DNA from: Perna viridis
Lineage: Eukaryota
DNA: 64,000 nucleotides
Direction of reading: 5' to 3'
NCBI GenBank assembly: GCA_037379345.1
Contig: CM074516.1
Coordinates: 14,694,001 to 14,758,000 of the forward strand
Every line of letters begins with the position of its first letter. Positions within the stretch are counted from its first letter, which is position 1. The notes under the pieces were generated by a model. That model ran no database searches. It saw only the letters and a program-made list of their open reading frames with translations, and was not told the DNA's origin. The position numbers were made by a program, and so were the translations under genes. Below are positions 21,446-45,866 of this stretch, in pieces.

Positions 21446-24400
21446 ATGTTTTTGCTCTCTAGATTGGCACTTTTAACATGGATTCTTACACTTCTAATTC
21501 TAGGTAAAATTTTCATTTTATTGGTCAAATATCTCGTCCTGTAATTAATAAAATATCTACTAAACGTTAAAGCCCAATCTGTTTGTCAAAAAAAAACAGA
21601 TTTCTGTATCATATTAAACAGAAATGATAGTATATGTAATACTAGGTAAATAGACGTGTGTATTCCGAATACTATATTTTCTATATTGATTTATATATTA
21701 AATTACCAATAAAATATTATACATGCTTCAAATAAATTAAAAATATATAAGACATATTACATTAATCAGTAATTAGTACTTAGTCAATTAATCAATCAGT
21801 AGTATAGTTATGATCATAATGAAGCATAAATGTCGCATCATAACATGCCACAAGAATGATATCTTTGACATTTTAAAGATTTAATTCTTCCAAGCGAAGA
21901 AATTTTTTCTTCATTTCTACAACATTTTGTAACAATACCAAACTAATCGTGAAATAATGGCATTCAATAATATCGTGCACATTTTTTGATAGATGATTTG
22001 CCCCAATTGTTCAGAAAGTTTTGTTTTTAAACCAATAATGATCCCACTAAATTACTTCTTCTTCTTCACATGTTGCGTGTTTTTCGTTTCCTTTTGGTTT
22101 ACAATTACTGTAACCAAGTTCAGATTTCTTTTCGTCTCTGAACTAAAAATTCTACAGGAAATCAACGTCGTTCTTTTCCTCTCTTAAACATTTAATTGCA
22201 CTGGTCTGTACATATTATATCTTTTCATTTTAAAATATTATCTGTTTCCGAATTAAACGGCACTGCATTTTTTTTTTTTTTTTTTTTGTGCTTGGGCTGA
22301 TTTTATAGAAATAGACTCTTCTCGTTTCGTGCTACTTAAATTGTCTAAATTTACTATATTCTATTTTCAGAGATAAATAGCCTCATATTTCCGAATGTTT
22401 CGCTCGGGAGCACTACCATACTTCCATGCCAAAACCCACCGGGTAATACAATCATCCAATGGTTTCTTCTGGAAACGAAAATAAATGCAACAACCAGCAC
22501 TTATACCGATGGTTTCCGGATTAATAATGGTCTCCCTGTCCATAAAAGAATTCGGATTCTACGTAATTCGACGTATGGAAACTATGCCTTAGAGATTCAA
22601 AATGTGTCCATGGCTGATACGGGCTTGTACAGATGTGCATTTCTAAATAACAGCGTTCTGCAGCATGTTGATGTCAAATTGAATGTAATAGGTACGTATT
22701 AAATTCTTAGCTAGAATTGAAACACAAGTGTTGGTCTCAGTACGAATAGACCCTTTTATGTTAAATGCGGTTTGTCGATGAGCATATGCTGATTCGAGGT
22801 AAGGCTAGGGATCGTACAAAATCAATATATTATTAAAGAATACACTCAGCAACTAAGAAATGAATAAGTAACCCGTATTCCACTAAAATAAAACTTTGAA
22901 TATTGATCTGGCGCACGCGCCGTTTTCTTTTCGAAACATCTGTCGTAACTGGTGTCAGGAAAGCGGGGAATTTTCAAAGAATTTGTTGTCACTGTTGAGT
23001 TGGCCAACAAAACTATGTCAGATGTAATTTTTTGAAGTGATTATTTAACTAGTCTTGTGACAATATTACATGTATCAGTAGTAAGGAACACGTGTACACA
23101 ATATAACAATCAGATGGCCATATGTTTTGTACATAAGCTGTATATGGGTCCGTACACGTGATTCAATTGAAAACCAGTAGTGCAAACGCAAAAAGCGGTG
23201 CTGCATACATTCGTTTGTGGGTAGAACTTTTCACAAGCCGTCTTTTAATAACCAAGTAAAACAAAATGGCTATTATCGAGATTTATCTGAAATTCATCCC
23301 TTATTCCGACGGAGGATAATGAAATTTATTTTTCAAAAAACAGGTGGGTTCCGAAAACGACATTTAGGATTCCTTACTATCTGCTTACATTAGCACATTT
23401 CTGTCCAACAATAGAGGATTCCTATTGGAACCCCTTCAAGGACCCACCATTAATTGTGTATATGTTAAATATTTGGTTACAATAATGAATGTTTTGTGTG
23501 ACTTGGAACACATTGAAACACTGAATCAGGAGAATAGGTATGATGTATATGTTATGGAGTCACAAACCCCACCGGAATAAAACAAAATGTCATGCCAAGG
23601 CCACTCATTAGCATACAAACAAAGTATACTGCGTAAGTCATTATACTATACTCCAGATTACCAGTCATACATGTTAACTTTATAACACTGTCTTATGAGT
23701 TATTCAGTTGTAAATAGACTTCTAGCCCGCAAAGCGAGAAGTCTATTTGAATAACGAGGACGGTGGTGTTAAAATGATTTGTTACATGAATTGACCACAC
23801 ACGTTAATCGATAATTGACAAATGAGAGATATAAAGGCACGGGTAGTTCGTGCTCTCGTTCTGAGAGGAGTCATTTTCGTCAGAGGCGGAGTTGTCCATG
23901 TGCATTTTTTTATGCTAATGAAGTTGGATATTGCACAGCTGTTTTCCAATTGAGTTCTATGGGAACACGTGATCTTTCATGCAATATCATACAATATTTA
24001 TAGGTAGAGCACACTTGGTTTTCCTCATATATTAATTTTTGAAAAATGACCAAAAGAAAAATCTCAATTCATGAAGCAATTACTTACTACATGTTGATAT
24101 TAAACTTCGGGTTTTTTCTATTGATAGATGTTCTCGATTTGCCAGAAAATGAAGTGGATATGGAACAAAATATTACGAAATATGCTGATCTTCAACAGGA
24201 ACAAAGACAAAAAGATATCAAAGGTTTTTTTGTGCTTGAACATTAGTTTTGTACATATAGACAAGGTCAATATGACTTAGTACGTATATTGATGAATTGT
24301 ATGTCACGTGGCTTACTCTTAACCAGCAATCGTTTCATTTTACGAGTCGCCAAATAAAAAGACTTTCGTCGAATCGATGTACCTGACGCCTATATATCTT

Positions 24401-25240
24401 TATTGAAGAGGGTACGACAGGACACCAATATTGGTCTCTGAGGGTTGTCTTGCTAATAGAATACTATCACAGACCTATAACCACTTTCTGATTCATGGCA
24501 TATCACTCCGCAAGCCTATAGGCTGTGCTATACAAGATTTCTAAAATAAAATCACAAGGCATGAGCACTACTCATAACAAATCTGCCAAGCTACATGTAG
24601 TTCCGTTGTTCTGTACTTATTTTCATAAAGAGGAGGGGTTCAGTACTGAATATGGTTTGAAATTGCGAATCAAAACCTCTGTGTAGGAGATTGAGTAAAT
24701 TGAGTTTCTCTCTGTGTCACTTAAAATGTAATTCATAATATTAGCAAGTGATTTAGTGGAAGAACAAAAAATTCGCGAAATTGCACACTAATCAATTGCA
24801 CTTGCATATACATGTACATCTATGATGTATATATAACATCCAAAAGTGTCCTGCGTGAAATTCTTTCCACTGGAGAAAAAATAATATCAAATTTATGTAT
24901 TTTATGCTAGTTAACTGTTTTCAATATACGGGTAAGAAAAATAATTGAGTTAATATAACAAAATATGTTGTTAGGACGGGGTCGATGAATTGTTTTCATT
25001 CTTCTTCTTTGTTATGGAGATACATTTACAGTATATGTCTTTATTCATTGAACGACATGAATAATATATTGAGCTATCATTTCAGATTTCGAAATACGGG
25101 CAGTGTATATAGCAATATCAGTAATGGGAACGGTGTGTATTGTGCTCGCTATTATTGGTGTTGCTGTAACAAAGCGTAAGAGCCAAAGCAAACGGAAAAC
25201 ACATATTCATGACGAAAGTAACACGTCTACTGGAACATAA
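21446..25240 (+). CDS. IgV type-I membrane receptor, copy A, tail truncated (209 aa)
   Basis: Exons 21446-21503 (signal MFLLSRLALLTWILTLLIL), 22371-22691 (V-set: LPC..QW..YALEIQNVSMADTGLYRC), 24128-24223 (acidic stalk) and 25086-25240 (TM VYIAISVMGTVCIVLAIIGVAV, short tail, TAA). All introns are GT-AG phase 1. The ancestral frame stays open to TGA at 25576. Confidence 0.85.
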
Positions 25241-44700: not shown

Positions 44701-45866
44701 AGAGGGTGCGACAGGGGCACCAATATTGGTTTCTGAAGGTTGTCTTGCTAATAGATTACTATCTCTTCCACAGACCTATAACCGCTTTCTGATTCATGGC
44801 ATATCACTCCGCTAGCCTATAGGCTATTCTATACAAGATGTGAAAAAAATTAGAAGGCATGAGCACTACTCATAACAAATCTGCTAAGCTACATGTAGTT
44901 CCGTTTTACTGTACTTATTTGCAAGAGGCGGGGTTCAATACTGAATGTGGTTTGAAATAGCGAATCAATCCTCTGTGCAGGAGATTGAATAAATTTGGGT
45001 TTCTGTCTGTGTGTACTTAAACGCAATTCATAATATTAGCAAGTGATTTGGTGGAAGAGCAAAGAACTAAAAATTCGTGAATTTGCACACTATTCAATTG
45101 CACTTGCATATACATGTACATGTATGATGTATGTGTAACATCCAAAAGTGTCCTGCGTGCAATTCTTTCCACTGGAGAAAAAAAAATCAAATTTATATAT
45201 TTTATGCTAGTTAAATGTTTTCAATATACGGGTAAGTTGTGAAAAATAATTGAGTTAATATCAAAAAATGTGTTGTCGAGACGGGGTCGATGAAATGTTT
45301 TCATTCTTTTTCTTCGTTATGGAGATACATTTACAGTATATGTATTTATTCATCGTACGACTTGAATAATATATTTAGCTTTCATTTCAGATTTTGAAAT
45401 ACGGGCAGTGTATATAGCAATATCAGTAATGGGAACGGTGTGCATTGTGCTCGCTGTTATTGGTGTTGCTGTAAAAACGCCTAAGAGCCAAAGAAAACAG
45501 GAACCCCTTGTTCATGACGAAAGTTACATGTCTACTGAAGCATACTATAACGATCCTTCATCCAGAACACGTGATGTACCGTCTTACATACAACAAGCGT
45601 ATGGGGAACAAGATTCTGCTCAGAAATATGACGTTTCGAGACTTCCGGAATTGCAGGGAACCACAGGTAGTCTTTTGTATTCGTATATTGAAGATGTGCC
45701 AAGCCCTTATCAACTTTTGACACGTGATCAGCAGGAATCACATGTATACAAGACTTGCGCAGTGAATAATGCTAAAGGCGGAATGATTTCAAAAAGTGAT
45801 GAAAAGTCACATGACTATGCAGAGTGTGGTCCTACCTCAGAATTGTATATGACCATGTCTGGGTGA
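38167..45866 (+). CDS. IgV type-I membrane receptor, copy C, full length (316 aa) with tyrosine-motif tail
   Basis: Exons 38167-38224 (signal), 39846-40166 (V-set Ig, DTGMYRC), 44412-44507 (stalk) and 45391-45866 (TM + tail ..EAYYND..LLYSYIEDVPSPYQLL..HVYKTC..HDYAEC..ELYMTMSG*). 951 nt in frame, canonical phase-1 introns. Confidence 0.9.
40411..43335. mobile_element. ~2.9-kb non-autonomous DNA transposon in intron 2 of copy C
   Basis: TIRs atgggcgtttttcaataaaagtg / cgcttttgttgaaaaaagcccat; absent from copies A and B. Internal minus-strand decayed coding piece at ~42095-41890 (VECMQRVGSKGANCFLWPKK..*YEFEDILGIISQP). Confidence 0.75.
41709..41773. repeat. (TA)n microsatellite
   Basis: About 32 perfect TA units. 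Confidence 0.95.

What the first reader, a model, noticed from the sequence alone, without database searches (positions are those of the whole stretch)
21446..45866. One IgV family in three formats: full signalling tail (C), tail-less membrane form (A), potentially secreted Ig (B)
Seen: all three keep intact signal and Ig exons, and every lesion lies downstream of the Ig domain. A stops in its last exon with no cytoplasmic Tyr. B lost donor phase and the stalk exon. C is complete. Established: paired and decoy formats characterise CD300/TREM/NITR-type clusters, and Hydractinia Alr genes encode Ig receptors with ITAM/ITIM tails. Inference: a signalling/decoy recognition system, perhaps allorecognition-like. 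Early pseudogenisation of A and B is the simpler alternative.
Basis: partly seen in the sequence, partly recalled or inferred. Interest (0 to 1): 0.8.

Follow-up and report, generated by a model that had tools for sequence, protein, structure and literature searches.

The report
One live Ig receptor, decaying copies
An invertebrate genome carries a small private cluster of one immune-type receptor gene: one intact copy, one transcribed copy cut short by a stop codon, one broken copy and one old relic. This looks more like ordinary gene birth and death than a designed three-format system.

Summary
Three paralogues of a four-exon gene (signal, IgV, 32-residue stalk, membrane helix plus Tyr-rich tail) lie at 21446-25576 (A, +), 35267-31478 (B, -) and 38167-45866 (C, +).

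- **C** is intact. Both N gaps are non-coding (5' flank and intron 1), but C's exon 1 sits on an island between them.
- **A** has a single TAC>TAA change in the last exon. That leaves a 23-residue tail stub without Tyr.
- **D**, a fourth heavily decayed relic, lies at 5427-6631.

New evidence:
- A-specific spliced RNA contigs occur in two independent studies at roughly 0.3-0.7 of C's depth.
- B changes at its intron rate in every part, so I read it as a pseudogene. Its transcription was not tested.
- A's Ig exon shows neutral-like dN/dS.
- The family has no relatives elsewhere in this 723-Mb genome. The tail also matches nothing among 1.84 billion protein representatives.

Verdict: a birth-and-death cluster of an orphan ITIM/ITAM-like IgV receptor. 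Only A could be a second working format, and that is unresolved. The scan noted this stretch in two other notes.

The parts
38167..38224 (+). C exon 1: start codon and signal peptide (MFMLSRLALLTWIITLLFL), phase-1 donor. It lies on the 37955-38382 island between two N gaps.
39846..40166 (+). C exon 2: IgV domain with the Cys, Trp and DxGxYxC landmarks, phase 1-1.
   Evidence: Pfam V-set E 1.1e-11; fold model and PDB neighbours; C-derived RNA contig
40399..43370 (.). C-only 2.9-kb insert in intron 2: a dispersed repeat with copies on at least six other contigs at 79-93% identity.
44412..44507 (+). C exon 3: 96-nt acidic stalk exon, phase 1-1, with a weak donor (AAG|GTTTAT).
   Evidence: its use is inferred from contig-end logic
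45391..45866 (+). C exon 4: membrane helix AVYIAISVMGTVCIVLAVIGVAV plus a 130-residue tail with 12 Tyr. Motifs: LLYSYI and SPYQLL (ITIM-fitting, in ITAM spacing), YYN and YMTM. Ends at the stop codon.
   Evidence: C-derived RNA contigs
21446..21503 (+). A exon 1: signal peptide, intact.
22371..22691 (+). A exon 2: IgV, intact, 82% protein identity to C.
   Evidence: A-specific RNA contigs end exactly at the donor at 22691
24128..24223 (+). A exon 3: stalk exon, intact.
25086..25576 (+). A exon 4: conserved membrane helix, a divergent 26-codon stub, and TAA at 25238-25240. The frame stays open behind the stop and keeps all tail motifs.
   Evidence: A-specific RNA contigs cover 25108-25403 and 25454-25624
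35210..35267 (-). B exon 1: signal peptide, open frame, with a Leu-to-Pro change in the hydrophobic core.
33365..33678 (-). B exon 2: IgV frame open, but 7 bp are lost at the 3' end, which puts the donor in phase 0. Read-through ends at a stop at 33335-33337.
32313..32314 (-). B deletion junction: about 0.9 kb is missing here, including the stalk exon.
31478..31814 (-). B exon 4 remnant: 5-bp frameshift, in-frame TAG, and the 3' third of the tail gone.
5427..6631 (+). D: a fourth, heavily decayed copy. Ig-exon relic at 5427-5848 (70% DNA identity, five stops) and tail-exon relic at 6294-6631.
37815..37954 (.). N gap in the spacer between B and C, upstream of C exon 1. Non-coding; not filled.
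38383..38517 (.). N gap in C intron 1. Non-coding; not filled.

Best explanation
This is a small, lineage-restricted cluster of one receptor gene that evolves by duplication and decay.

**Working gene (C).** It encodes signal peptide, one canonical V-type Ig domain, a short acidic stalk, one membrane helix and a Tyr-rich tail. By its motifs (inferred, not shown), the tail would be phosphorylated and recruit SH2 proteins.

**History.** Segmental duplication made a direct copy (A), an inverted copy (B, head to head with C) and an older copy (D).

**Dead copies.** D and B are pseudogenes.

**A.** It is still transcribed and spliced. It carries one nonsense codon in the last exon. If translated it gives an Ig-stalk-helix protein with a 23-residue basic stub and no signalling motif.

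**A's status.**
- A young, still-expressed pseudogene: about 55%.
- A selected tail-less form: about 40%.

The 'three formats' are therefore mostly a decay series caught at three stages.
For: Shown:
- Copy structure and lesions.
- V-set match for all three Ig exons.
- The genome holds only these copies plus relic D.
- B-specific change equals B's intron rate everywhere. Signal and Ig exons 4.6% against 6.3% (p 0.30). Helix 6.2% and tail 6.6% against intron 7.0%.
- C's exons are constrained: 1.6% against 4.5%, p 0.01.
- A-lineage Ig change is 18 non-synonymous to 6 synonymous, which is the neutral ratio.
- A-C divergence falls from about 20% in intron 1 to 4.6% in the 3' flank, with 0% patches. 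Gene conversion can therefore explain the well-kept frame behind A's stop.
- Runs X12 and X14 have zero depth over the introns. They hold A-specific contigs with 0-2 mismatches beside C-specific ones (26 mismatches plus a 15-nt gap expected, 25 plus 15 seen), at depth ratios of 0.3-0.7.
- A neighbouring TNF-like exon at 17205-17852 is also decayed.
Against: - A has only one lesion, and it lies in the last exon.
- A's splice sites, signal peptide, Ig domain, stalk and membrane helix are all intact.
- Its helix (1.3%) and post-stop tail (1.8%) changed less than its intron (5.0%).
- The 26 codons holding the stop are the most divergent part of the unit: 14.1% A-specific, p 0.009. They lost three Tyr, with 13 non-synonymous changes to 1 synonymous. 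Selection for a silent stub would produce the same picture.
- All rate tests rest on small counts.
- B's transcription was not tested.
- I could not see whether the TAA is one of the two mismatches in the A-specific RNA contigs.
Confidence: 0.6

Rival explanations
1. A and C form a working pair. C signals through its Tyr motifs. A binds the same or a similar ligand but is silent, acting as a decoy or dominant-negative partner. B and D are dead.
For: - A is expressed at a level comparable to C in two studies and is spliced at the Ig donor.
- The stop lies in the last exon.
- The membrane helix is conserved (1 change in 80 nt).
- The stub lost Tyr three times and became more basic. Its A-specific rate is three times the intron rate.
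- No other locus in the genome could have donated the stub sequence.
Against: - A-lineage Ig change looks neutral (18:6).
- B's stub is also fast (12.8%), so the segment may simply be variable or have escaped gene conversion.
- A's helix has no charged residue for an adaptor.
- A young pseudogene that keeps its promoter is also transcribed.
- In raw-read run X21, all 2-4 reads over the Ig-exon diagnostic sites carry non-A letters.
Confidence: 0.3
2. One reading: all three copies are maintained, with C signalling, A tail-less and B a secreted Ig.
For: - B's signal and Ig frames are open.
- Both possible fates of its transcript end soon after the Ig domain: read-through gives 10 extra residues, and the phase-0 donor joined to exon 4 gives 8.
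- B shares its upstream region with C at 83%.
Against: - B has at least five independent lesions.
- Its exon rates are not distinguishable from its intron rate in every part.
- It has a Leu-to-Pro change in the signal core and a Pro-to-Leu change next to the first Cys.
- An open 104-codon frame after 4.6% change is expected about half the time by chance (my estimate).
- No B product is on record.
Confidence: 0.07
3. The copies are assembly artefacts, either uncollapsed haplotypes or a misjoined palindrome around the gaps.
For: - Two N gaps flank C's exon 1.
- B and C form an inverted repeat.
- A public metagenome contig (L012) is a mosaic of A, B and C.
Against: - The copies differ by 8-20%, which is too much for haplotypes.
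- An independent DNA run carries A-type contigs at single-copy depth (about 55-65) beside C-type ones.
- RNA runs hold separate A and C contigs.
Confidence: 0.03

Closest known systems
Vertebrate paired and decoy IgSF receptor families (CEACAM1/CEACAM3/PSG, LILRB/LILRA3, KIR, CD300, SIRP)
   Same: - Tandem paralogues with similar Ig ectodomains.
- One has an ITIM/ITAM-type tail, and others are truncated.
- Gene conversion and frequent pseudogenes occur in these families (CEACAM: PMC5112662, PMC2832619, PMC11646289; soluble LILRA3: PMC10679719).
   Different: - No sequence or fold affinity beyond a generic V-set domain.
- The truncated copy has no charged helix residue, GPI signal or separate exon design. 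It has only a point nonsense change.
- Only one intact gene remains.
- Here the 3' half is homogenised between A and C, not the ligand-binding exon.
Hydractinia Alr family (PMC9546547)
   Same: An invertebrate cluster of IgSF type I proteins, some with ITAM or ITIM tails, accompanied by pseudogenes.
   Different: - Alr has 41 genes with two or three atypical Ig domains that lack the canonical motifs.
- Here there is one canonical V-set domain and three copies.
- Contigs from other samples are 99.3% or more identical, so the extreme polymorphism of an allorecognition locus is not seen.
Adhesion-type IgV domains (CAR D1, nectin-1 D1, CD96 D1, butyrophilin and PD-L1 IgV)
   Same: Best sequence and fold neighbours of the Ig exon.
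   Different: Identity is only 15-24%. Those proteins have further Ig domains and unrelated tails.

Membership tests
Immunoglobulin superfamily, V-set domain (PF07686) | Match to the family profile above its curated cut-off, over the whole domain. | tested here: met
   A 48 bits, C 45.3, B 49.5 against a cut-off of 26. Profile positions 7-108 of 109 for A and C.
Immunoglobulin superfamily, V-set domain (PF07686) | Landmark residues: Cys in strand B, Trp in strand C, DxGxYxC in strand F. | tested here: met
   LPC...QW...DTGxYRC is present in all three copies and in two distant paralogues. The beta-sandwich model has pLDDT 72.
CD300/TREM-type receptors | IgV closest to CD300, TREM, NKp44 or pIgR, with an extra disulfide (recalled from knowledge). 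| tested here: not met
   The domain has only two Cys. Best PDB sequence hits are CEACAM, contactin, butyrophilin and PD-L1. Best fold hits are CAR, nectin, CD96, IgLON and VL, with pIgR only at rank 27.
CD300/TREM/KIR-type activating partner | Short tail plus a charged residue in the membrane helix for an ITAM adaptor. | tested here: not met
   A's helix AVYIAISVMGTVCIVLAIIGVAV has no K, R, D or E.
NITR (fish novel immune-type receptors) | V domain ending in a J-like FGxG motif (recalled from knowledge). | tested here: not met
   The last strand reads DVKLNVI, with no FGxG.
Hydractinia Alr / allorecognition-type locus | Multi-domain atypical Ig ectodomain, a large gene complex and extreme allelic polymorphism (PMC9546547). 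| tested here: not met
   One canonical V domain. Three copies plus a relic in 723 Mb. A-specific contigs from other samples show 0-2 mismatches in 158-296 nt. The sample of individuals is small.
ITIM/ITAM-bearing immunoreceptor (functional class) | Consensus [SILV]xYxx[ILV] and YxxL/I-x6-8-YxxL/I in the cytoplasmic tail. | tested here: met
   C has LLYSYI and SPYQLL, which together form YSYI-x6-YQLL. Both criteria are reached in 0.3% of shuffles of the tail. The motifs are also kept in A behind the stop and in B.
ITIM/ITAM-bearing immunoreceptor (functional class) | Tyr phosphorylation and recruitment of SH2 phosphatase or kinase. | not testable with these tools
   Needs biochemistry.
Paired receptor system (functional class) | Both members are expressed and have similar ectodomains. 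| tested here: met
   The A and C Ig domains are 82% identical. Both have copy-specific RNA contigs in X12 and X14.
Unprocessed pseudogene (B) | Several disabling lesions and a neutral rate of change. | tested here: met
   Five lesions. Exon rates equal the intron rate.
Unprocessed pseudogene (A) | A disabling lesion plus loss of constraint. | tested here: inconclusive
   One nonsense codon. The Ig non-synonymous to synonymous ratio of 18:6 is neutral-like. But the helix and post-stop tail changed less than the intron, and the gene is transcribed.

The most novel reading that the evidence does not exclude
A and C are a true invertebrate paired receptor that arose recently and on its own. C is an ITIM/ITAM-type signalling receptor. 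A is a tail-less decoy made by a single nonsense change and held against gene conversion from C. The locus began as a head-to-head TNF-ligand / IgV-receptor cassette.
Probability: 0.25. Interest if true: 0.6.

Novelty: new member of a known kind. Interest (0 to 1): 0.32.

Why it matters
If A proves to be a selected tail-less partner of C, this locus would show a signalling/decoy receptor pair being born by one point mutation in an invertebrate. That would be independent of the vertebrate families and useful for asking how paired receptors start.

As the evidence stands, it is an orphan ITIM/ITAM-like IgV receptor with decaying duplicates. That is useful for annotation:
- C should be called a gene.
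- B and D should be called pseudogenes.
- A should be flagged as a transcribed truncated copy.

It is not surprising to a specialist.

Tried and rejected
**Relatives of the tail exon**
- The word search returned only the window's own product.
- The full scan of 1.84 billion representatives also returned only that product.

**Relatives of the Ig exon**
- The word search found nothing, but it sees only proteins of 58-185 residues.

**The one public contig carrying C's tail**
- L012 comes from an ENA metagenome. It looked at first like a new allele with B's deletion and C's intact tail.
- Window-by-window identity shows an assembler's mosaic of C, B, C and A, so I dropped it.

**Other look-ups**
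- A JGI metagenome scan for A's stop-codon context with the third base left open found no match.
- An exact look-up of B's read-through product found nothing on record.
- An Rfam scan of 20000-51000 found nothing.
- A search for a donor of A's divergent stub found only A itself and C at 84%.

**Limits of the reads evidence**
- Only one reads call was allowed, and I spent it on A at 85% likeness so that C-derived reads would lie on it too.
- B's last exon is 84.5% like A and so fell below the threshold. B's transcription therefore stays untested.
- The table of differing letters was cut off, so the base at 25240 in the A-specific contigs was not shown.

Every search was done exon by exon, by reference.
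- The N gaps were not filled.
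Full report
**1. What is there**

A self-comparison of the window shows one unit present three times:
- A is direct, at about 21402-28540.
- B is inverted, at about 35864-29339.
- C is direct, at about 37491-50259.
- B and C lie head to head as a large inverted repeat.

Reading the sequence and aligning the copies gives a four-exon gene:
- Exon 1 (58 nt): start codon and signal peptide.
- Exon 2 (321 nt): one Ig domain.
- Exon 3 (96 nt): an acidic stalk.
- Exon 4: a 23-residue membrane helix and a 130-residue tail.
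- All internal borders are AG/GT and phase 1.
- All three Ig exons match Pfam V-set over its full length and carry the Cys, Trp and DxGxYxC landmarks.
- A model folds as a beta sandwich with pLDDT 72.

**2. The gaps**

- The N run at 37815-37954 lies 213 nt upstream of C's start codon.
- The N run at 38383-38517 lies in C's intron 1.
- No exon touches a gap, so reading frame is not at stake.
- C's exon 1 stands on a 428-nt island between the two runs. Its link to the rest of C depends on the scaffold.
- The blocks on both sides align to B, and the island also aligns to A, in the same order and direction.

**3. The lesions**

- C is intact.
- A has one change, TAC to TAA, at 25238-25240. The product would end 23 residues behind the helix with no Tyr. 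The frame behind the stop stays open and keeps every tail motif.
- B has five lesions:
  - a 7-bp loss that removes the last two Ig codons and leaves a phase-0 donor;
  - a 0.9-kb deletion that takes the stalk exon;
  - a 5-bp frameshift in the last exon;
  - an in-frame TAG in the last exon;
  - loss of the last third of the tail.
- If B were transcribed, either outcome would end soon after the Ig domain.
- A fourth copy, D, survives only as relics of the Ig and tail exons at 5427-5848 and 6294-6631, with many stops.
- 'All lesions lie behind the Ig domain' is true. But 60% of the coding length lies there, so the pattern is not beyond chance (about 0.08, my arithmetic).

**4. Rates of change**

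With three copies, a change seen in only one copy can be assigned to that copy.

Over the signal and Ig exons against their introns:

| Copy | Exons | Introns | p |
|---|---|---|---|
| A | 7.0% | 15.7% | 1e-5 |
| B | 4.6% | 6.3% | 0.30 |
| C | 1.6% | 4.5% | 0.01 |

Copy-specific change in the 3' half:

| Copy | Intron 3 | Membrane helix | Tail |
|---|---|---|---|
| A | 5.0% | 1.3% | 1.8% (behind its stop) |
| B | 7.0% | 6.2% | 6.6% |

- B therefore behaves as neutral DNA throughout.
- C's signal and Ig exons are constrained.
- A is mixed. Its helix and post-stop tail changed less than its intron. Yet its Ig exon shows 18 non-synonymous to 6 synonymous changes, which is the neutral ratio.
- A-C divergence falls along the unit: about 20% in intron 1, 11.6% in intron 2, 8.9% in intron 3 and 4.6% in the 3' flank, with 100-200-nt patches of 0%.
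- I read this fall as gene conversion between A and C in the 3' half. That would also explain why the frame behind A's stop looks so well kept.

**5. An odd spot**

- The 26 codons just inside the membrane, which hold A's stop, are the most divergent part of the whole unit.
- A-specific change there is 14.1% (p 0.009 against intron 3), B-specific 12.8% and C-specific 3.8%.
- Between A and C this segment has 13 non-synonymous changes to 1 synonymous.
- A lost Tyr three times here (to Asn, to stop, to His) and gained basic residues.
- No other place in the genome could have donated this stretch.
- Possible causes are selection for a silent stub, a generally variable segment, or an island that escaped conversion. 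I cannot tell which.

**6. Transcription**

The runs used:
- The run search found DNA runs, invertebrate gut metagenomes and several probable RNA runs of the same organism.
- I laid four runs on 21100-26900 at 85% likeness, so that C-derived sequence would also lie on A.
- X12 and X14 come from two studies. Both have zero depth over 21682-22263 and 22846-23427 and clear depth over the exons, so they are RNA.

A-specific contigs:

| Place | Mismatches to A | Depth X12 / X14 |
|---|---|---|
| 22534-22691 | 0-1 | 4.8 / 9.0 |
| 25108-25403 (spans the stop) | 2 | 9.9 / 13.7 |
| 25454-25624 | 0 | 4.1 / 12.6 |

C-derived contigs:

| Place | Differences from A seen | Expected for C | Depth X12 / X14 |
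|---|---|---|---|
| 25108-25403 | 25 mismatches plus a 15-nt gap | 26 plus 15 | 14.6 / 28.7 |
| 25454-25624 | 9 mismatches | 9 | 14.5 / 26.1 |

Reading of these results:
- A is therefore transcribed at roughly 0.3-0.7 of C's level.
- In the stranded raw-read run X21, the first mates over the exons lie on the minus strand. In most stranded libraries that points to a plus-strand RNA, which is the gene's direction.
- In X21 the few reads on the Ig exon all carry non-A letters.

**7. Splicing**

- The A-specific Ig contig is 164 nt long. Of these, 158 nt lie on 22534-22691 and stop exactly at the donor, so the transcript is spliced there.
- Its ends fit 31-letter word logic: 22564-30 at the start and 22667+30 at the end, where 22564 and 22667 are the first and last A/C differences in that stretch.
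- It stops 6 nt into the next exon. So that exon must be identical in A and C for at least 7 nt.
- The stalk exon is identical for 45 nt. Exon 4 differs at its fifth base.
- This is indirect support (inference) that the stalk exon is real and used.
- C-like contigs run to at least 26578, which points to a 3' UTR of about 1 kb.

**8. What could not be shown**

- The table of differing letters was cut off. I cannot say whether the TAA is one of the two mismatches in the A-specific contigs.
- B's last exon is 84.5% like A and so fell under the threshold. No B-specific piece was listed.
- B's transcription therefore stays untested.

**9. Relatives**

- In the 723-Mb genome the tail exon matches only A, B and C.
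- The Ig exon matches only A, B, C, relic D and three distant domains at 33-34% identity.
- The tail has no relative among 1.84 billion representatives or in the word search.
- The Ig exon has none among short proteins.
- Its nearest solved relatives are generic: CEACAM, contactin, butyrophilin and PD-L1 by sequence, and CAR, nectin-1, CD96, IgLON and antibody VL by fold.
- Nothing points to CD300, TREM, NITR or Alr in particular.
- A's helix has no charged residue, so it does not fit the classic activating partner.
All searches were exon by exon.

**10. The tail**

- C's tail has 12 Tyr in 130 residues.
- LLYSYI and SPYQLL both fit ITIM, and together they fit ITAM spacing (YSYI-x6-YQLL).
- Shuffles of the tail reach both criteria in 0.3% of trials.
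- YYN and YMTM fit Grb2-type and PI3K-type sites but are common by chance.
- Signalling is inferred from the motifs only.

**11. Surroundings**

- An intact TNF-domain exon lies just left of the window on the minus strand.
- A decayed copy of it lies at 17205-17852, head to head with A.
- So the older duplications carried a TNF gene and an IgV gene together. In each pair one member has died: TNF alive with D dead, TNF dead with A truncated.
- This fits a locus where surplus copies decay.

**12. Verdict**

C is a live, orphan ITIM/ITAM-like IgV receptor gene. B and D are pseudogenes.
- A is a transcribed, spliced copy with one stop. It may be a young pseudogene (my odds 55%) or a selected tail-less form (40%).
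- Compared with the vertebrate paired and decoy families (CEACAM: PMC5112662, PMC2832619, PMC11646289; LILR: PMC10679719) and with Hydractinia Alr (PMC9546547), this works alike at most for the A/C pair. It is not a member of any of them.

Noticed in passing
window 5427-5848 and 6294-6631 (+): A fourth, heavily decayed copy (D) of the receptor gene. The Ig-exon relic has 70% DNA identity and five stops. The tail-exon relic has 65% identity.
   Followed up: partly
G000:C6:14693343-14693747 (-), just left of the window; window 17205-17852 (-): An intact TNF-domain exon (Pfam TNF, E 7e-13) lies just outside the window. A 69%-identical decayed copy with a broken frame lies head to head with A. This bears on the scan's other note about a TNF/IgV cassette: the cassette was duplicated, but one member of each pair is dead.
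   Followed up: partly
window 25166-25243 (A), 45471-45548 (C) and the matching part of B: The 26 codons just inside the membrane are the fastest-changing part of the whole duplicated unit in the A and B lineages (14.1% and 12.8% against 3.8% in C). Almost all changes are non-synonymous. This is unexplained.
   Followed up: partly
window 40399-43370: C's intron 2 holds a 2.9-kb dispersed repeat that A and B lack. Copies lie on at least six other contigs at 79-93% identity.
   Followed up: yes
window 26670-26860, also about 47113-47287: A short interspersed repeat with enormous depth in DNA (10^5 to 10^6) and high depth in RNA runs. It has no Rfam match.
   Followed up: partly
window 53551-57165 (-): A retroelement with a reverse transcriptase and a GIY-YIG nuclease (Penelope-like by domain pair). 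A 97%-identical internal duplicate links 53551-54163 and 56554-57165.
   Followed up: partly
L012 (ENA ERZ13706909, NODE_75107): A public metagenome contig of this organism is an assembler's mosaic of copies C, B, C and A. Its 145-residue product is the only database protein matching C's tail.
   Followed up: yes
window 48644-48781: A third N gap, in C's 3' flank and outside the finding.
   Followed up: no
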